From the sequence record MF360958.1: a stretch of DNA of 64,000 bases, one strand, 5' to 3'. Below are positions 3,602-21,509 of this stretch, in pieces. The notes below the pieces were generated by a model, which was given only the letters and a program-made list of their open reading frames with translations, was not told where the DNA came from and made no database searches. Positions within the stretch are counted from its first letter, which is position 1; each line of letters opens with the position of its first letter. The translations under genes were made by a program, and so were the position numbers.

Positions 3602-4105
3602 ATGAAAGATAAAAAAACTGGAATGGGAAGTCACCAATCAGCACATATGAAAACTGATGAATGGTTAACCCCTCCTTAAATTATTGAAAGTTTAGGCGAA
3701 TTTGACCTAGACCCTTGTAGCCCCGGAGATAGAAGACCGTGGGATATGGCAAAAAATCATTATGGACTTCCTGAAAAGGATGGACTTGTAGAACCTTGGT
3801 TTGGTAGAGTATGGTGCAATCCGCCGTATGGCAGGGATACTATCAAATGGATGAATAAATTATGCGAACATGGAAATGGAATAGCTCTGATTTTTGCCAG
3901 AACAGAAACATCCATGTTTTTTGATACTGTTTGGGATAAAGCCGATGCAGTTTTCTTTTTTAGAGGAAGACTTTATTTTAGAGACATTTTTGGTAATAAA
4001 GCTAAAGCTAATGCGGGAGCACCTTCCTGTTTAGTTGCATATGGAAATAATAATGTTTTATCTTTAGAAAAAAGCAATTTAGATGGAAAATTAATTTTAT
4101 TATAA
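3602..4105 (+). pseudogene. phage N6-adenine DNA methyltransferase (Dam-like) interrupted by an in-frame TAA at 3677-3679
   Basis: ATG 3602 frame reads TDEWLTPP*IIESLGEFDLDPC and continues into the VWCNPPYG catalytic motif and ARTET. Confidence 0.85.
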
Positions 4106-4413: not shown

Positions 4414-4833
4414 ATGTATGTCAATTTTGAAGATTTAAATGATCATATTGGGCAAGTTGTTTATATGAACAATAAGCCCGAAGAAATTTATGAAATTGTA
4501 TCAGTTAACGAAGTCGTTAATGATATTAAAGTTATTTTTAATATTAGCAATAAACAAAGTCATAACACTCTAAGCTCTAATTTTCATCTCAAAGACTTTA
4601 ACAGTCTTATCCAAAACACCGAAGATGATCTTGAACATTATAAAAATCTGAAAAAAATGTTTACAGGGTGGCATGTTGATCTTTTAGATACTTATATTTA
4701 TACATATATTAATACAGAAGTTTTAGGATTTGAAAAAAATAAAACTGAAAATGGAAGTGATGAACCTATTCCTCAAATTACAAAAGAATCTTTCATTAAT
4801 AAATTTAAAGATATTATAAAATGGTGGAAGTAA
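4414..4833 (+). CDS. hypothetical protein
   Basis: Start moved to MYVNFED, downstream of AAGGGG RBS. Confidence 0.6.
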   Translation: MYVNFEDLNDHIGQVVYMNNKPEEIYEIVSVNEVVNDIKVIFNISNKQSHNTLSSNFHLKDFNSLIQNTEDDLEHYKNLKKMFTGWHVDLLDTYIYTYINTEVLGFEKNKTENGSDEPIPQITKESFINKFKDIIKWWK

Positions 4834-4913
4834 ATATGGACTTTATTACTTTTATTCAATGTATTAATATTTTAGATGGTCTTATTTTCGGATTTTTAAC
4901 TTTTGAAACCCTA

Positions 4914-5011: not shown

Positions 5012-5289
5012 CTGCTAGTAATGCTCAAAGCGAAAGGGATAGTTTAAAACACTCTCATACTAATATGATCGTGGAAGAAAAATGGTAACATAAAGCAACG
5101 ACCATGTTTAGGGTATCACCCCGCCGACCAGAGCGTATCTGGCAGGCTTTATGGTGACATTGGACTGAAGTGATCAGAATGTGTGATGAAGATTCAAATT
5201 TGAACGAGTAGCGTGGTAGAGCTTGCGCGACACCCTAAACATGGTCTTTTACGCGCAGGTTGATGGTTCGAGTCCATCCTAGCAGGCCA
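5012..5289 (+). ncRNA. 278-nt tRNA-scaffolded ncRNA with ~190-nt D-loop insertion and 22-nt anticodon-position loop
   Basis: Acceptor CTGCTAG(5012-5018)/CTAGCAG(5279-5285)+G+CCA; T-arm GATGG-TTCGAGT-CCATC; D-stem GCTC(5023-5026)/GAGC(5219-5222); stem GCGCG/CGCGC; variable loop AGGTT. Confidence 0.8.
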
Positions 5290-6490: not shown

Positions 6491-7018
6491 ATGATAAAAG
6501 AAGAAGAAATTTGGAAAGATGTTGATGATTATCCAGAATATTTTATGATCAGTTCTTTTGGTAGAGTATGGTCGAAAAGAACTAATAAAATATTAAAGCA
6601 AACAATTGGAAAAACAGGTTATCCAGTAATATCTTCTAAAATAGGTGGTAGAAAAGGTAAATCAATTTGTAAAAAAGTTCATCGTTGGGTTGCTAATGCA
6701 TTTATAGATAATTTAAACAATAGATCCTGTGTTAATCATATCGATGGGAATAAAACGAATAATTATTGGAAAAATCTTGAATGGTGTACGTACAGTGAGA
6801 ACACAAAACATGCTTATAAGAACAATTTAATTGAAGCCAAATGTGGCGAAGAACATTCTTCATCAGTTTTAAGTTTAGATTTTATTAAACAGATAGAAAA
6901 TGAATACGTGCCATATTCTAAAACAAATGGATTAAGAGCTTTAGCAAGAAAATATAATGTAAAACATAATACATTATCAAATGCCTTAAACAATGTGAGT
7001 AAATATTACGGGAAGTAG
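6491..7018 (+). CDS. NUMOD4-HNH free-standing homing endonuclease inside the tRNA operon
   Basis: EIWKDV..Y.ISSFGRV NUMOD4; VHRWVA.AFI..VNHIDGNKTNN..NLEW HNH; last codons overlap tRNA-Pro. Confidence 0.92.
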   Translation: MIKEEEIWKDVDDYPEYFMISSFGRVWSKRTNKILKQTIGKTGYPVISSKIGGRKGKSICKKVHRWVANAFIDNLNNRSCVNHIDGNKTNNYWKNLEWCTYSENTKHAYKNNLIEAKCGEEHSSSVLSLDFIKQIENEYVPYSKTNGLRALARKYNVKHNTLSNALNNVSKYYGK

Positions 7019-7084
7019 CTCAAGTGGGAGAGCACGCGGTTTGGGACCGCGAGGTTGGGGGATCGTGACCCTCCTTCCCGACCA
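7009..7084 (+). tRNA. tRNA-Pro(TGG)
   Basis: CGGGAAG/CTTCCCG acceptor, CGCGG-TTTGGGA-CCGCG, CCA; atypical T-loop ATCGTGA. Confidence 0.92.
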
Positions 7085-7317: not shown

Positions 7318-7472
7318 TAGGATGTAGCTGACATTGGTATAGGCGCATGGGTGGTTGACCATGTTGAGGATTACGCAACGGTAACAGGTTAGTGGCAATA
7401 TACTAGTTAAGTTGGCATTGATACTACCAATACGCGCCTCACTTGTGGGTTCGATTCCCACCATCCTAACCA
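7318..7472 (+). ncRNA. 155-nt tRNA-like RNA with 8-nt anticodon loop and ~80-nt variable region
   Basis: TAGGATG/CATCCTA+A+CCA; T-arm GTGGG-TTCGATT-CCCAC; CATGG-GTGGTTGA-CCATG; TGAGG(7365-7369)/CCTCA(7437-7441) closes the insertion. Confidence 0.75.
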
Positions 7473-8259: not shown

Positions 8260-8652
8260 ATGTCTCACAGAAGTGATGATGAAAAAATCAAAGATTACAT
8301 TAATCAAATCAATAACAAATGGTACAAAACAGAGAAAAAAGAAAATATGAAGGAACAAAAAGAAAACATCAGAGAAGGTGTTATTGTTGCTTGGATTTGT
8401 ATTATTGTTATTGCAATTTTAAGCTTGACGAGTTATTTGATTCTTGAAGATTGTGCGGATGGACAACTCATTATTGGTAATGGCTGTAAAATGTCTGACA
8501 ATTATGGCGAAGCATTTACTATAGCAATGTTGATGTCTATAGTTATTTGGATTGGTATTCTCATTGCATTATTTTATCTAAAGCTACTTTTTATTAATAC
8601 ACCAAGGCTTATAATTTGTAAAATTAAAGAAAAACGTCTTGACAAACGCTAA
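8260..8652 (+). CDS. hypothetical membrane protein (two TM helices)
   Basis: Start moved to ATG 8260 after GGAGA; two hydrophobic stretches. Confidence 0.6.
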   Translation: MSHRSDDEKIKDYINQINNKWYKTEKKENMKEQKENIREGVIVAWICIIVIAILSLTSYLILEDCADGQLIIGNGCKMSDNYGEAFTIAMLMSIVIWIGILIALFYLKLLFINTPRLIICKIKEKRLDKR

Positions 8653-8689
8653 GGATATGTGACATACTATATATCCTTAGTCATGGGGT

Positions 8690-8816
8690 ATCTACTAAAG
8701 CTTTGTGCAGTGGATCAAGTGGGCTTGAGGACAGACATTGTGTCTGTCAAACGGTTCGATTCCGGGGCGCTGTAATCAATTGTGTAGTTAAGAGACAAGG
8801 CAAAGCTTTAGTAGAT
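8690..8816 (+). ncRNA. structured ncRNA: cloverleaf-like domain with T-loop on a 16-bp terminal stem
   Basis: ATCTACTAAAGCTTTG/CAAAGCTTTAGTAGAT perfect IR; inner stems TGCAGTG/CGCTGTA, TCAAG/CTTGA, GACAGACA/TGTCTGTC, CGG-TTCGATT-CCG; TTGACA promoter at 8639. Confidence 0.65.
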
Positions 8817-8831
8817 TATTTTTAAACAATG

Positions 8832-8973
8832 GGCTGTAGCTGCGGAATCTTTAATTGATAGCGTGATGTGAGTTAAAGATTATGGCCAAAGCGAGACTGT
8901 CAGTATTATTTCCTAATCACGCCTCTAGGTTTAATACTGACGGTTGAGGGGTTCGAATCCTCTACAGCCGCCA
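8832..8973 (+). ncRNA. 142-nt tRNA-like RNA with two long hairpins whose loops are complementary
   Basis: GGCTGTAG/CTACAGCC+G+CCA; TTCGAAT T-loop; AATCTTTAA/TTAAAGATT and CTGTCAGTATTA/TAATACTGACGG hairpins; loop GCGTGAT(8861-8867) complementary to ATCACGC(8916-8922). Confidence 0.75.
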
Positions 8974-9016
8974 AATTTTAAATAACGCTGATAAACTCTT
9001 ATTAAAAGGTATATGT

Positions 9017-10108
9017 ATGTCACAACTTAAAACATCGTTTTCTGATCTTGATACTATTGTTAAAGTTATTCAATATGATGAAGATAGTGTTACTGACTAT
9101 CTGAAACCAGCGGTATATTCAGTAGATTACAACTTGCTAGATGGATTTTTCCTTAATAAGCATAGTTCTCATTTTGAACAACCAGATAAAGTGTACGGGA
9201 AAATTCATCGTCGCGTTGGAAAAATTATTCATTCATATAGCAACAGCGAAAGTTCTTTTGGTGTTTTACTGAGTGGGTCAAAAGGTTCAGGAAAAACAAT
9301 GACCTCTTGTATTACAGCCAATCGCTGTATTCATGAACTAGGTCTTCCTATTATTTTGGTACAAAATGAATTTAATGCTTTTGAACTTTCTTCTTTTATT
9401 CAAAAGCTTGGCGAAGTCGTTGTATTTTTTGATGAATTTGGCAAAAACTTTAAAAATGAAGATGGAAATCAAAATGGTCTTTTAACACTATTTGATGGTA
9501 CTGGTTCCGATAAGCGTCTAGTTATTCTCACGGAAAATAATGTTTGGGATATTAATAACTTCATGCTAGAACGGCCCGGAAGAATTCACTATCATTTTCG
9601 TCATGATAAACTTGATGAAGAAATGGTTCGAGAATATTGTTCTGATTATGATATTCCTGAAAATAAAATTGAACAAATTTGTCTTCTTCGTGAATCATCA
9701 ATGGATTTTTCTTTTGATACACTGCAAGCGGTCGTTACTGAATACTTAAAATATCCTGATGATATCTTTTCACTTGTAGAAGATTTGAATATCGAACAAC
9801 CTATTTCTATGTCTCAAAAAATGTTGGAAATTACAGAAATTACTGATCAGCAAGGAAATTCAAGAACACTATGGAATAAACGTCATAAAACAAACAATGT
9901 TGTTTTTCCAGAAGGATTTTCTGAGACAGAACTTTTTGTCAATGATGTTGATGAACAAGATTGGAGAATTGTCTTATTAGATTGCGGATCTATCGTAAAA
10001 CGAGAAGGTAATAACTACGTATTCCATACATCATTTGATAATGATCAAACAGAACATTTAGTTATTAAAGGTAGATACTATCAAGATAATTTTAAAAAAT
10101 CGTTTTAA
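9017..10108 (+). CDS. AAA+ family ATPase
   Basis: Walker A GSKGSGKT, Walker B VVVFFDE, ERPGR arginine finger. Confidence 0.88.
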   Translation: MSQLKTSFSDLDTIVKVIQYDEDSVTDYLKPAVYSVDYNLLDGFFLNKHSSHFEQPDKVYGKIHRRVGKIIHSYSNSESSFGVLLSGSKGSGKTMTSCITANRCIHELGLPIILVQNEFNAFELSSFIQKLGEVVVFFDEFGKNFKNEDGNQNGLLTLFDGTGSDKRLVILTENNVWDINNFMLERPGRIHYHFRHDKLDEEMVREYCSDYDIPENKIEQICLLRESSMDFSFDTLQAVVTEYLKYPDDIFSLVEDLNIEQPISMSQKMLEITEITDQQGNSRTLWNKRHKTNNVVFPEGFSETELFVNDVDEQDWRIVLLDCGSIVKREGNNYVFHTSFDNDQTEHLVIKGRYYQDNFKKSF

Positions 10109-10117
10109 TCATGCAAA

Positions 10118-10248
10118 GTTCGGGTAGCTTAAAAGGGTGCAATCGGTTTAGATGAGATCCATGGTATCATTTATTCTTGATTACATCGACAAAGCGGACA
10201 GGACATAGGCCCCCTGTCATGGTGGTTCGAATCCATCCCCGAGCACCA
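10118..10248 (+). ncRNA. 131-nt tRNA-like RNA lacking a canonical anticodon loop
   Basis: GTTCGGG/CCCGAGC+A+CCA; GGTGG-TTCGAAT-CCATC; hairpin GACAGG/CCTGTC before the T-arm. Confidence 0.7.
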
Positions 10249-10261
10249 TACAATAGAACGA

Positions 10262-10377
10262 GTCGCCAGATAGTTTCGGTGCTTACGATTCTGGCTTTGG
10301 CGGGCACAAGCCTACGCGACAACAGCACCCTTCGCATTAACCTTGGAGTATAGATGCGAGGCCGGAGGAAACCCCTC
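10262..10377 (+). ncRNA. GC-rich pseudoknotted RNA element following the tRNA-like RNA
   Basis: GTCG/CGAC, CCAGA/TCTGG, GGC/GCC, loop GGTGCT(10278-10283) with AGCACC(10324-10329), TCGCAT/ATGCGA, GAGG/CCTC. Confidence 0.5.
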
Positions 10378-11119
10378 ATAAACCACTATCAATCATAATA
10401 TCTCCATAGACTGCTAAAAATTGATTATCAAACCACACTTCTTTATGATCTTTAATATTATATTTAAAATTTGAAGTAGAAGTTAAATCAAATTTTGTAG
10501 GAGTGAAGTTTGTTTTTATAAAATTATAAAGACCGTCATTGATAATCGTATCCTTAATATTTTCAATTTCTGGAAAACTTTTTATTAAATTTTCTCTAAC
10601 ATTAGTTTGTTTATTATCAAATTTTTTCACGGTATTAACTAAATCTTTATATGTTTCAAAACCTTCAAAACTTTTGCCTAACATTTCTGATAATTCTTCT
10701 AAAAGATCAATATAAGTATTGAGATCTTTCATAGGTAAATCAAAAGATGCGTTATGCCATATATCACGTTTAGGGCATACGCCGATTTTCGAACCGTTTT
10801 TAGGAAATACTGTATAAACCGTCCCAAAGTTTCGAGCATAATCAGGATTGGTTGTACAAATAACACTCCTATCTGGATATTCTTCCCACCATGGCGCTTC
10901 ATTAATAATTAAATTATAAAAATTAGCGGTATTTCTGGAAATACGGCCTTCTAATGGATTCATTATTTTAAAATTATCAGGTTCATTATCTCCAAAACCT
11001 TTGTATATACCATACCCTTTTTTATACTGCGCATATGCTTCTGAAAAATCATTTTCCAAAAGCTCTTTTAATTTATCAATATTATCGCTTTCATTAAGTA
11101 TTAAATCTTGTATTTTCAT
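10376..11119 (-). CDS. putative virion-packaged ART-fold-like protein (paralog family)
   Basis: Start moved to MKIQDLILNES; YKG..R...DRSVICTT..YARNFG.VY.VFPKNGSKIGVCP..DIW shared with 22759, 16749 and 56252. Confidence 0.6.
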   Translation of the reverse strand: MKIQDLILNESDNIDKLKELLENDFSEAYAQYKKGYGIYKGFGDNEPDNFKIMNPLEGRISRNTANFYNLIINEAPWWEEYPDRSVICTTNPDYARNFGTVYTVFPKNGSKIGVCPKRDIWHNASFDLPMKDLNTYIDLLEELSEMLGKSFEGFETYKDLVNTVKKFDNKQTNVRENLIKSFPEIENIKDTIINDGLYNFIKTNFTPTKFDLTSTSNFKYNIKDHKEVWFDNQFLAVYGDIMIDSGL

Positions 11120-11204
11120 AATATTACCTAATCTTTTAAAATATTTATCTAAAATTTTCATTGACATATATTACTAAATTACGATATAATTATATTAATT
11201 AGTA

Positions 11205-21403: not shown

Positions 21404-21486
21404 CTCCCGTGCCCCAACACTGGCCTTCTAAGCCAGTCCTTAACGTTGGAAGGAGGTATGAGGTTCGATTCCTCCACGGGAGGCCA
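21404..21486 (+). tRNA. D-armless tRNA-Arg(TCT)-like RNA with 8/4 acceptor/T fold
   Basis: CTCCCGTG/CACGGGAG+G+CCA; GAGG-TTCGATT-CCTC; CTGGC-CTTCTAA-GCCAG; variable hairpin TCCTT/AAGGA; only ~8 nt where the D-arm should be. Confidence 0.75.
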
Positions 21487-21509
21487 ATTATATTACACTT
21501 GAGGTTGTT

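What the first reader, a model, noticed from the sequence alone, without database searches (positions are those of the whole stretch)
8832..8973. tRNA-like RNA in which D- and anticodon-position hairpins form a 7-bp kissing loop
SEEN: 8-bp acceptor GGCTGTAG/CTACAGCC with G73-CCA and a TTCGAAT loop. Two long hairpins (9 bp and 12 bp) replace the D and anticodon arms, and their loops carry GCGTGAT and ATCACGC, exact complements. There is no anticodon-sized loop. KNOWN: 8-bp acceptors with G73 occur in tRNA-Sec and allo-tRNAs. INFERENCE: a compact, locked tRNA mimic rather than a decoding tRNA.
Basis: partly seen in the sequence, partly recalled or inferred. Interest (0 to 1): 0.7.

Follow-up and report, generated by a model that had tools for sequence, protein, structure and literature searches.

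The report
Kissing-locked tRNA-shaped phage RNA
A giant salt-lake phage encodes a 142-base RNA that keeps a tRNA's top half but swaps the decoding half for two long arms whose tips pair; a distant relative keeps that pairing with different letters, so the fold is real although its function is unknown.

Summary
The window is Salicola phage SCTP-2 (440 kb). At 8832-8973, in an unannotated gap 43 nt upstream of an AAA ATPase gene, lies a four-way-junction RNA. It has an acceptor stem, a canonical T arm, G73-CCA, and two arms of about 21-22 layers. The arm tips carry GCGUGAU and AUCACGC.

ARAGORN and Rfam do not call it. It folds far better than shuffles (z = -5.4).

Evidence that the fold is real:
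- Metagenomic relatives about 12% diverged keep the fold, with two compensatory pairs, and leave both heptamers untouched.
- A covariance model of this one sequence finds one full-length homolog (31 bits, E about 2.5e-6), next to a homologous ATPase gene in a Marinobacter integrated element. There the loops read GUGCACA and UGUGCAC: five of seven kissing pairs changed on both sides and still pair.
- T4 "species 1 RNA" (rnaC, function unknown since 1975) has the same layout. I find a covarying 6-bp loop-loop helix in it.

The tRNA-Sec/allo-tRNA analogy is not: the acceptor/T stack is 11 bp, not 12-13. What the RNA does remains inference, most likely a processed stable decoy or partner RNA.

The parts
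8639..8668 (+). Sigma-70-like promoter: TTGACA, 18-nt spacer, CATACT preceded by TG. It is placed to drive the upstream structured RNA, the finding and possibly gp384.
   Evidence: 10 of 12 matches, TG present. A TTGACA at the same distance is kept in the otherwise divergent upstream flank of metagenomic relative X4 (table 7). No terminator-like site lies between here and gp384. Function as a promoter is inferred.
8684..8830 (+). Upstream companion RNA ('RNA1'). A 16-bp terminal stem (8690-8705 with 8801-8816) encloses a tRNA-like core with a GGUUCGAUUCC T loop. It is context, not part of the finding proper.
   Evidence: z = -3.6. Weak tRNA-Sec match at 15 bits.
8832..8973 (+). The tRNA-shaped RNA gene as a whole, 142 nt.
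   Evidence: Self-hit of model R2 at 175.9 bits. Lies in the gap between annotated CDS 383 and 384 of MF360958.1.
8832..8838 (+). Acceptor 5' strand GGCUGU(A). It pairs with 8964-8969 (6 bp). A8838-U8963 is a possible seventh pair.
   Evidence: Three of 6 pairs are compensatory against the homolog.
8839..8892 (+). Arm 1, in the D-arm position. Base GCU/AGC and GC/GC, then an 11-12 bp A/U-rich stem, tip pairs 8858-60 with 8867-69, and a 6-nt loop.
   Evidence: In relative X4, U8841-A8890 becomes C-G and U8850-A8877 becomes A-U, and the tip pairs are kept through one-sided changes.
8861..8867 (+). Kissing sequence 1, GCGUGAU. GCGUGA is the whole terminal loop of arm 1.
   Evidence: Unchanged in all metagenomic relatives. 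Replaced by GUGCACA in the homolog.
8893..8894 (+). Two-base GA linker between the arms. GA is also the linker in the homolog.
8895..8945 (+). Arm 2, in the anticodon or variable-arm position. A 14-bp stem, a UUU/UU internal loop, a 4-bp stem and a 10-nt loop.
   Evidence: U8904-A8936 and U8907-A8933 become U.G in three runs, which is tolerated only in + strand RNA. Five of 14 pairs are compensatory against the homolog.
8916..8922 (+). Kissing sequence 2, AUCACGC, at the 5' side of the arm 2 loop.
   Evidence: Unchanged in all relatives. Aligns column for column with UGUGCAC of the homolog.
8947..8963 (+). T arm: AGGGG, UUCGAAU, CCUCU (canonical T-loop register).
   Evidence: The homolog has AGGGG-UUCAAUU-CCCCU. 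The X2 change G8946A breaks the shifted register but not this one.
8964..8973 (+). Acceptor 3' strand ACAGCC, discriminator G8970, and encoded CCA.
   Evidence: CAGCCGCCAAATT is kept in relative X4 (table 7). Every T-arm element in the window is followed by N73-CCA.
9017..10108 (+). gp384, a classical-clade AAA ATPase (phrog_2376), 43 nt downstream on the same strand. A 53%-identical homolog lies next to the RNA's homolog.

Best explanation
This is a gene for a non-decoding, tRNA-shaped small RNA.

What it keeps and what it replaces. It keeps the 'top half' of a tRNA: the acceptor stem, the T arm with a canonical T loop, the discriminator and CCA. It replaces the D arm and anticodon arm with two arms of equal length, about 21-22 layers each. 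Their terminal loops form a 6-7 bp Watson-Crick kissing helix (8861-8867 with 8916-8922). That helix ties the arms side by side into a closed, compact body.

Shown:
- the four-way fold;
- its conservation by compensatory change;
- conservation of the loop-loop complementarity through sequence change in a homolog;
- its position next to, and on the same strand as, a phrog_2376 AAA ATPase gene in both genomes.

Inferred:
- It is transcribed from the promoter at 8639-8668 together with the upstream structured RNA.
- It is released like a tRNA. RNase P would cut before G8832, and 3' trimming would stop at the encoded CCA. The acceptor/T minihelix is the known minimal substrate of those enzymes.
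- It accumulates as a stable RNA that the ribosome cannot use.
- It acts in trans as a mimic or decoy for proteins that recognise the tRNA top half, or as a partner of the adjacent ATPase. Its release would at the same time define the 5' end of the gp384 message.

Its closest functional analogue is T4 species 1 RNA (RNA C).
For: Structure:
- MFE -53.9 kcal/mol, z = -5.36.
- The canonical-T-loop version is nearly isoenergetic at -52.1.

Not a decoder:
- No ARAGORN or Rfam call.
- The loops are 6 and 10 nt.

Selection on the fold:
- Relative X4 differs at 15 of 125 positions but breaks only 2 pairs, against 6.4 expected (P about 0.012).
- It includes two double compensatory changes, and its MFE is -53.6.

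Kissing helix:
- Exact 7-mer complement, chance 0.4-1.7%.
- The loops are accessible, and the duplex energy is -9 to -10.7 kcal/mol.
- Both heptamers are invariant in four metagenomic runs.
- The homolog L151:5194-5336 is found by the single-sequence CM at 31.4 bits, E 2.5e-6. Canonical tRNAs score 21 bits or less across about 1 Mb.
- Twelve of 49 nested pairs are compensatory.
- The homolog's loops carry GUGCACA and UGUGCAC at the aligned positions, so 5 of 7 kissing pairs are changed on both sides. My estimate of the targeted chance is about 5 x 4^-7 = 3e-4.
- The kissing segments start 21-22 nt into each arm in both RNAs.

Analogy:
- The T4 rnaC family has the same order of elements. Its 6-bp loop-loop helix is 100% paired in 16 sequences, with two independent compensatory changes.

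Context:
- The element sits in a tRNA island.
- ATPase homologs recur beside tRNAs.
Against: - No expression data exist. No RNA run was shown to hold the region.
- Only one homolog was found, so the kissing covariation rests on one pairwise comparison. Its arm 1 upper part could not be aligned base for base, and alignment A6 is fitted to the model.
- GUGCAC in the homolog is a palindrome. It could also mediate dimerisation or be a protein site.
- The acceptor/T stack is 11 bp rather than 12, and the acceptor end is plastic in one relative (X2: T8830G plus a CA insertion after 8968). This is odd for an RNA that must be handled like a tRNA.
- A dominant haplotype in run X2 deletes 8761-8960, so the RNA is dispensable at least there.
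- The homolog encodes no CCA.
- The function (decoy or partner) is untested. T4 RNA C, the analogue, has no known function (PMC3014915, PMC9697503, PMC12685909).
Confidence: 0.72

Rival explanations
1. It is mainly a cis-acting processing or stability element of the gp384 mRNA (tRNA 'punctuation'). The tRNA-like fold exists to recruit RNase P or 3' processing, so that the ATPase message gets a defined 5' end. The excised RNA itself has no job.
For: - It lies 43 nt upstream of the gp384 start on the same strand, with no terminator in between.
- In other genomes, homologous ATPase genes are preceded at 24-45 nt by ordinary tRNAs or tRNA-like elements, or followed closely by them (L152, L156, L157, L401).
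- Fourteen of 57 ATPase loci have same-strand tRNAs within 2.5 kb.
- The X2 deletion haplotype keeps a T loop plus the acceptor 3' end in front of the gene.
Against: - A plain tRNA or minihelix would be enough for punctuation. It does not explain two 20-layer arms or a kissing helix maintained by covariation.
- In the Marinobacter element the homolog lies downstream of the ATPase gene, not in its leader.
- This reading is not exclusive of the best explanation.
Confidence: 0.25
2. It is a chargeable tRNA-like RNA. A synthetase (SerRS, or TrpRS given the nearest relatives) aminoacylates it through acceptor and G73 identity. It then delivers or sequesters an amino acid or EF-Tu outside normal decoding.
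For: - It has G1-C72, G2-C71, G73 and an encoded CCA.
- Arm 2 abuts the T stem, where a class II variable arm sits.
- The 3' 23 nt are identical to a phage tRNA-Trp, and similar 3' ends occur in tRNA-Trp and tRNA-Ser genes.
Against: - There is no anticodon, which is the major Trp identity element, and no D arm or elbow.
- The stack is 11 bp.
- The homolog has discriminator U and no CCA, so the acceptor identity is not conserved.
- The acceptor end varies in relative X2.
- Identity rules are cited from general knowledge and were not tested here.
Confidence: 0.1
3. The complementary loops act between molecules rather than within one. They would serve dimerisation or pairing with another RNA (antisense-type regulator), not an intramolecular lock.
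For: - In the homolog both loops carry the palindrome GUGCAC. A related island RNA (L152:1984-2078) also shows GUGCAC in a loop.
- Loop 1 of one molecule could pair with loop 2 of another.
Against: - In the finding the two heptamers are not palindromic.
- Their only nearby complement is each other. Other copies in the 64-kb window are far away and few.
- Equal arm lengths in both homologs fit an intramolecular contact.
- An intramolecular partner has a large effective-concentration advantage (inference).
Confidence: 0.1
4. It is a decaying tRNA pseudogene that picked up hairpin insertions and has no function. The loop match would then be coincidence.
For: - The window holds several aberrant tRNA-like genes.
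- A natural deletion of the element dominates in one metagenome.
- The 3' end resembles tRNA-Trp.
Against: - The compensatory substitutions and the low number of broken pairs in a 12%-diverged relative argue against it (P about 0.012).
- A full-length homolog in a bacterium of another order has 12 compensatory nested pairs and re-matched loops.
- z = -5.4.
- The CCA and the promoter -35 are conserved.
Confidence: 0.05

Closest known systems
Bacteriophage T4 species 1 RNA (RNA C, rnaC; AF158101 70908-71046)
   Same: - About 140 nt (139 against 142), encoded in the phage tRNA region just after another small structured RNA (rnaD there, 'RNA1' here).
- Same order of elements: acceptor stem, then a long arm abutting it, then a second hairpin, then a canonical T arm, then the acceptor 3' strand.
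- No anticodon arm.
- The tips of the two arms are complementary. In T4, UUGACG pairs with the whole 6-nt loop CGUCAA. This is 100% paired in 16 family members, with two independent compensatory changes.
- Neither RNA is in Rfam.
- Function unknown (PMC3014915, PMC9697503, PMC12685909).
   Different: - No detectable sequence homology. The rnaC model scores the finding at 4.1 bits (E about 10), and the finding's model scores rnaC at 11.6 bits.
- In T4 the arms are unequal (about 34 nt against 10 nt to the kissing site) and are separated by a 9-nt linker. Here the arms are equal with a 2-nt linker.
- T4 has a 7+5 stack with tandem U.U and no encoded CCA. Here the stack is 11 bp with an encoded CCA.
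- There is no AAA ATPase neighbour in T4.
Canonical tRNA (Rfam RF00005), in particular phage tRNA-Trp
   Same: - T arm and T loop GGUUCGAAUCC, acceptor helix, G73, CCA, and a location in a tRNA island.
- The 3' 23 nt are identical to a tRNA-Trp of a viral contig.
   Different: - No D arm, no 7-nt anticodon loop, 142 nt long, and an 11-bp acceptor/T stack.
- Not detected by ARAGORN or RF00005.
tRNA-Sec and allo-tRNAs (8/5, 9/4, 8/4, 9/3; PMC5389517)
   Same: G73, and eight consecutive complementary bases at the two ends.
   Different: - Those tRNAs have a 12- or 13-bp acceptor/T branch, an anticodon arm and a D arm.
- Here the eighth pair would leave a 3-bp T stem and also competes with arm 1.
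- There is no RF01852 hit on 8832-8973.
- A different element in the window (21404-21487) does look 8/4.
Bacterial Y RNA-like YrlA, tmRNA tRNA-like domain, and other tRNA mimics
   Same: RNAs that keep a T arm and acceptor-like module for recognition by tRNA enzymes while the rest of the molecule does something else.
   Different: - YrlA is closed at the acceptor end and carries a Ro-binding stem.
- tmRNA has a tag reading frame and pseudoknots.
- Neither feature is present here, and there is no Rfam or ARAGORN tmRNA hit.
- Whether the phage encodes a Ro/TROVE protein was not checked.
Loop-loop ('kissing') tertiary locks of multi-helix junction RNAs (purine riboswitch P2-P3, ColE1 RNA I/II, HIV-1 DIS). 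Recalled from general knowledge.
   Same: Two hairpin loops pair by Watson-Crick bases. In junction RNAs this holds two helices side by side. The homolog's palindromic GUGCAC recalls the DIS.
   Different: Those are unrelated RNAs. A 6-7 bp lock between the two arms of a tRNA-shaped four-way junction was not found in my literature searches.

Membership tests
Canonical tRNA (RF00005) | Cloverleaf recognised by tRNA detectors | tested here: not met
   ARAGORN finds 7 tRNAs in the window, none at 8832-8973. There is no RF00005 hit even at E up to 10.
Canonical tRNA (RF00005) | T arm with a G53-UUCRANN-C61 loop, acceptor helix, N73-CCA | tested here: met
   AGGGG-UUCGAAU-CCUCU at 8947-8963, ACAGCC-G-CCA at 8964-8973.
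Canonical tRNA (RF00005) | D arm and anticodon arm with a 7-nt loop | tested here: not met
   They are replaced by arms of 54 and 51 nt with loops of 6 and 10 nt.
Canonical tRNA (RF00005) | 12-bp acceptor/T coaxial stack (7+5) | tested here: inconclusive
   The stack is 11 bp with the canonical T loop (6+5 or 7+4). It reaches 12 only with a T loop shifted by one base. The X2 change G8946A argues against the shifted register.
tRNA-Sec / allo-tRNA | 8- or 9-bp acceptor with a 12-13 bp branch, plus an anticodon arm | tested here: not met
   The eighth pair G8839-C8962 clashes with the T stem and arm 1. There is no RF01852 hit on the element and no anticodon loop.
T4 RNA C (species 1 RNA) family | Sequence/structure homology to the rnaC covariance model | tested here: not met
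   Model R1, built from 16 rnaC sequences, scores 8834-8968 at 4.1 bits, E about 10. The reverse test gives 11.6 bits, E 0.33.
T4 RNA C (species 1 RNA) family | Architecture: about 140 nt, acceptor + long arm + second arm + T arm, in a phage tRNA region, with the arm tips complementary | tested here: met
   for T4. for the finding.
New family: finding + L151:5194-5336 | Significant full-length match to the finding's covariance model | tested here: met
   31.4 bits, E 2.5e-6, model positions 1-142. Background tRNAs score 21 bits or less.
New family: finding + L151:5194-5336 | Loop-loop complementarity kept through sequence change | tested here: met
   GCGUGAU/AUCACGC against GUGCACA/UGUGCAC: 5 of 7 pairs changed on both sides. 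This rests on one homolog only.
New family: finding + L151:5194-5336 | Adjacent to, and on the same strand as, a phrog_2376 AAA ATPase gene | tested here: met
   43 nt upstream of gp384. The homolog lies 116 nt downstream of P0002, which is 53% identical.
tmRNA | tRNA-like domain plus a tag reading frame and pseudoknots | tested here: not met
   No ARAGORN tmRNA call. The only match is an 8-bit hit to the T arm alone.
YrlA / bacterial Y RNA | Ro(Rsr)-binding terminal stem with a closed tRNA-like module, and an rsr gene nearby | not tested
   No Rfam hit. The element has open, CCA-ended termini. The phage genome was not searched for a TROVE protein.
Stable, tRNA-like processed RNA | Expressed as a discrete RNA, cut by RNase P, CCA end present in vivo | not testable with these tools
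   No RNA run was shown to hold the region.

The most novel reading that the evidence does not exclude
Phages and integrated elements carry an unrecognised class of tRNA-shaped RNAs. In this class the decoding limb is replaced by two arms locked by a covarying kissing helix. The class includes the 50-year-old orphan T4 RNA C. The RNAs would work as structured decoys or adaptors that present only the tRNA top half, for example to tRNA-directed host immunity or to the neighbouring AAA ATPase.
Probability: 0.25. Interest if true: 0.85.

Novelty: new variant of a known kind. Interest (0 to 1): 0.66.

Why it matters
Phage tRNA islands are usually read as codon-usage or anti-nuclease supplies. Their odd members are ignored because detectors skip them, and this GenBank record annotates none of them.

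Here one such member turns out to be a selected, non-decoding fold with a defined tertiary lock. The same design principle shows up, with covariation, in T4 RNA C. That RNA has been abundant and unexplained since 1975.

This gives a concrete structural hypothesis and simple mutants (loop swaps) for an old open question in a model phage. It also links a tRNA mimic to a widespread phage ATPase family (phrog_2376) that recurrently sits beside tRNAs.

Tried and rejected
1. Rfam at gathering and at E up to 10, and ARAGORN: nothing on the element.
2. blastn of the region against 50,697 phage records: only the source genome plus T-arm matches to ordinary tRNAs. The two best unannotated hits (Aeromonas Aswh_1, Acinetobacter Ab3) are plain tRNA-Trp and tRNA-Arg.
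3. Exact and gapped DNA patterns:
   - Viral contigs gave no family member. They returned only tRNAs, unrelated mini tRNA-like elements or nothing; the hits number about what chance predicts, and none passed the fold filter.
   - Metagenome contigs also gave no family member. The 120 hits are tandem tRNAs.
4. gp384 as a single-protein anchor in viral contigs: nothing.
5. gp384-family alignment as an anchor: 44 loci. None holds a relative of the RNA, by a fold descriptor or by the CM.
6. T4 rnaC CM on the window: not significant. Homology to rnaC is rejected and only the analogy is kept.
7. The octamer GUGAUGUG shared between the finding and L151x in a MAFFT alignment looks coincidental.
8. L158:4168-4278 (20.7 bits, E 0.0015) has a poor acceptor and only a 5-nt loop match, so it is not counted.
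9. blastn of L151x against phages and plasmids: nothing.
10. Forcing the two heptamers into a nested helix costs 17 kcal/mol (-36.8 against -53.9), so an alternative secondary structure is rejected.
11. Archaeal-type bulge-helix-bulge introns in the arms: considered by eye and rejected, because the arms lack two 3-nt bulges 4 bp apart.
12. PADLOC: gp383, gp384 and the ORF at 10376-11167 (minus strand) match no defence model.

Full report
WHERE WE ARE. The window is 100% identical to Salicola phage SCTP-2, MF360958.1, a 440-kb jumbo myovirus from an Italian saltern. Window coordinate = record coordinate - 310000. The finding (8832-8973) lies in a 364-nt gap between CDS 383 and CDS 384. The record annotates no RNA genes here, although ARAGORN finds seven tRNAs in the window, five of them between 6366 and 7614. 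A sigma-70-like promoter (TTGACA, 18 nt, TG-CATACT) sits at 8639-8668. No terminator-like site lies between it and gp384.

THE OBSERVATION. The minimum-energy fold is a four-way junction:
- acceptor 8832-8838 with 8963-8969;
- arm 1 at 8839-8892;
- a GA linker;
- arm 2 at 8895-8945;
- the T arm;
- G8970-CCA.

The energy is -53.9 kcal/mol, z = -5.36, and none of 200 shuffles folds as well. A version with the canonical T loop (AGGGG/UUCGAAU/CCUCU) and a 6-bp acceptor is nearly as good at -52.1.

C8962 belongs to the T stem in either register, and G8839 closes arm 1. The acceptor/T stack is therefore 11 bp, or 12 only with a shifted, non-canonical T loop. This removes the resemblance to tRNA-Sec and allo-tRNAs (PMC5389517).

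Loop 1 is GCGUGA closed by A8860-U8867. Loop 2 is AUCACGCCUC. The heptamers GCGUGAU and AUCACGC are exact complements, and the complementarity does not extend further.

Chance estimates and accessibility:
- A Watson-Crick run of 7 or more between two such loops arises in 0.4-1.7% of random or shuffled loops.
- All loop bases except U8867 are unpaired in the ensemble, and the duplex is worth -9 to -10.7 kcal/mol.
- Forcing the two heptamers into an ordinary nested helix costs 17 kcal/mol.

No tRNA detector and no Rfam family matches the element, even at E = 10.

NATURAL VARIANTS. Public metagenome runs, three labelled soil metagenome and the rest unlabelled, hold relatives. Laying their contigs on 8560-9100 gave three partial haplotypes.

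The most diverged is X4, with 15 listed differences in 125 nt. Its changes fall as follows:
- U8841-A8890 becomes C-G, and U8850-A8877 becomes A-U. Both are compensatory.
- A-U becomes G.U at 8846. U-A becomes U.G at 8933 and 8936. These changes are tolerated only if the + strand is the RNA.
- The three tip pairs of arm 1 are kept through one-sided changes.
- Other changes fall in bulges and in the linker.
- Two pairs break (8843, 8873).

Re-folding X4 gives the same architecture at -53.6 kcal/mol. Random placement of 15 substitutions breaks 6.4 pairs on average, and P(2 or fewer) is about 0.012.

Both heptamers, and all of 8894-8932, are unchanged in every run. On its own this is weak evidence (P about 0.15). 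The -35 hexamer and CAGCCGCCAAATT are also kept in X4's otherwise divergent flanks.

Two observations point the other way. X2 has a lengthened acceptor end (T8830G plus CA inserted after 8968). X2 also has a dominant haplotype (depth 123 against 21) that deletes 8761-8960. So the RNA can be lost in nature.

A TRUE HOMOLOG. Pattern scans of viral and metagenomic contigs and blastn gave no relatives. I therefore used the neighbour as an anchor.

gp384 is a classical-clade AAA ATPase, phrog_2376. Its homologs (45-53% identity) lie in phages and integrated elements. Looking at their contigs showed two things.

First, the gene often sits among tRNAs, or directly after or before one (L156, L157, L401, L152). 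Fourteen of 57 loci have same-strand tRNAs within 2.5 kb.

Second, in Marinobacter shengliensis (L151, an island with a P4-type integrase) a 141-nt element lies 116 nt downstream of the ATPase gene. It has the finding's exact layout: acceptor, A, arm 1, GA, arm 2, G, AGGGG-UUCAAUU-CCCCU, acceptor.

A covariance model built from the finding alone (R2) hits this element over its full length at 31.4 bits, E 2.5e-6. Ordinary tRNAs score 21 bits or less. That includes 120 loci chosen for sharing the finding's acceptor and T-loop strings.

In the model-guided alignment 95% of cells pair, and 12 of 49 pairs are changed on both sides. These are 3 of 6 in the acceptor, 2 of 3 in helix 2 and 1 in helix 3 at the base of arm 1, 5 of 14 in the arm 2 stem, and 1 in the arm 2 tip stem. 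The caveat is that this alignment is fitted to the model.

The decisive point is the loops. The arm 2 loop heptamer AUCACGC aligns column for column with UGUGCAC. The terminal loop of arm 1 carries GUGCACA in place of GCGUGAU. So all seven kissing pairs are again Watson-Crick. Two are unchanged G-C pairs, and five are changed on both sides.

Given a diverged loop 2, the chance that an 11-nt loop 1 holds its exact 7-mer complement is about 5 x 4^-7 = 3e-4 (my estimate). In both RNAs the kissing segments begin 21-22 nt into each arm. Equal arm lengths are what an intramolecular lock requires. The homolog has discriminator U and no encoded CCA.

THE T4 PARALLEL. T4 encodes two small stable RNAs at the end of its tRNA cluster, rnaD and rnaC. 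Their roles are still unknown (PMC3014915; PMC9697503; PMC12685909). rnaC (139 nt) folds into the same order of elements.

I collected 16 distinct family members. Their consensus four-way structure has 24 of 41 covarying pairs.

The tip of arm 1 (UUGACG) is complementary to the entire 6-nt loop of arm 2 (CGUCAA). The six pairs are intact in all 16 sequences, with two independent compensatory changes. A-U becomes G-C in one clade, and C-G becomes U-A in another.

Rfam has no rnaC family. My literature searches found no description of this contact.

The rnaC model does not recognise the finding (4.1 bits), nor the reverse (11.6 bits). I therefore treat T4 RNA C as the closest analogue and not as a family member. 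Its arms are also unequal, so the geometry differs.

WHAT IT MOST LIKELY IS AND DOES.

Shown: a conserved, non-decoding, tRNA-shaped RNA whose two long arms are tied by a loop-loop helix, genetically linked to a phrog_2376 ATPase.

Inferred from established knowledge of tRNA processing (the acceptor/T minihelix is the recognised substrate of RNase P and the CCA enzyme): it is co-transcribed with the upstream RNA1 from the 8639 promoter, cut out like a tRNA, and accumulates as a stable RNA that cannot enter decoding.

The function beyond that is a guess. The options are a decoy or adaptor that presents only the tRNA top half, a partner of the ATPase, and, as a by-product, punctuation of the gp384 message.

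Four rivals are weighed in their own section: pure punctuation, a chargeable RNA, intermolecular pairing, and a pseudogene. The pseudogene reading is the only one the data clearly disfavour.

LIMITS.
- No expression data.
- One homolog only.
- Only 64 of 440 kb of the phage was examined.
- E-values from the shortened calibration are rough.
- No 3D modelling was done.

Noticed in passing
8684-8830 (+): A second structured RNA lies directly upstream of the finding. A 16-bp terminal stem (8690-8705 with 8801-8816) encloses a tRNA-like core with a T loop GGUUCGAUUCC and an 8-bp hairpin with a 3-nt loop. z = -3.6, with a weak 15-bit tRNA-Sec match. The layout recalls Y-RNA-like YrlA or a processing stem. 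Two X4 differences (8699, 8700) would break the long stem if the two X4 contigs come from the same genome.
   Followed up: partly
7318-7472 (+); 10118-10248 (+); 21404-21487 (+); about 5100-5287 (+); about 24196 (+): At least five more T-arm + N73-CCA elements are missed by ARAGORN and Rfam. One has an ~80-nt variable region and an 8-nt 'anticodon' loop. One has a D stem enclosing ~57 nt and starts 10 nt after the gp384 stop. One is an 8/4, D-armless element with anticodon loop CUUCUAA. One has a 15-bp long-range stem. Every T-arm element in the window ends in N73-CCA.
   Followed up: partly
6491-7018 (+): An HNH/NUMOD4 homing-endonuclease ORF sits inside the tRNA cluster, much as segB does in T4. 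Its annotated 3' end overlaps tRNA-Pro (7009-7084). The GenBank record annotates no tRNAs in this region.
   Followed up: no
8761-8960, seen in run X2: The dominant haplotype (depth about 123 against 21) joins 8760 to 8961 through CCCA. This removes the 3' half of RNA1 and nearly all of the finding. It is probably recombination between the two T loops, and it recalls the frequent tRNA-region deletions of T4.
   Followed up: partly
T4, L003:1408-1546 (-), and alignment A2: The T4 RNA C family has a covarying 6-bp loop-loop helix (alignment columns 42-47 with 99-104). It also has an acceptor stem with tandem U.U that becomes U-A/C-G in the Yersinia phage fHe-Yen9-01 lineage. I found neither described in the literature searched.
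   Followed up: yes
L151:5367-5499, L152:4095-4218, L154:5141-5273: A conserved RNA of about 125-133 nt with two GGUUCGAUUCC hairpins (CUGGYGAGUGUA...GGCUUAG.ACC..AGGUUCGAUUCCU..CGCCAGUG) lies downstream of the ATPase gene in three different elements. It is not in Rfam.
   Followed up: no
L151:1954-4001 and L152:1283-2109; L151 about 3900-3980 and L325:85-160: L151 and L152 share large conserved structured non-coding regions upstream of the ATPase gene, with shared motifs such as AUCGGAGAG...CUCUCCGAUGAAACCAGCAGA. A ~75-nt element GACCGGC...GCCGGUC-ACC sits right before the start codon in L151 and L325. L152:1984-2078 is a 95-nt tRNA-like RNA with a weak tmRNA hit (22 bits).
   Followed up: no
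L152:3271-3507 and 4678-4890: The island that carries an ATPase homolog also carries an Acb2/Tad1-hairpin (anti-CBASS/Thoeris sponge-like) ORF, a small RF-1-domain ORF and a P4-type integrase. It looks like an accessory or counter-defence neighbourhood.
   Followed up: no
Viral contigs L206-L324: Eighty-one of 122 matches to TGAGGGGTTCNANTCCNCT are not called as tRNAs. Many are mini tRNA-like elements (short acceptor + one hairpin + T arm), for example AGGUGAGCUGACAAGGCAGCGUGAGGGGUUCGAUUCCCCUCACACCUA, recurring at gene ends.
   Followed up: no
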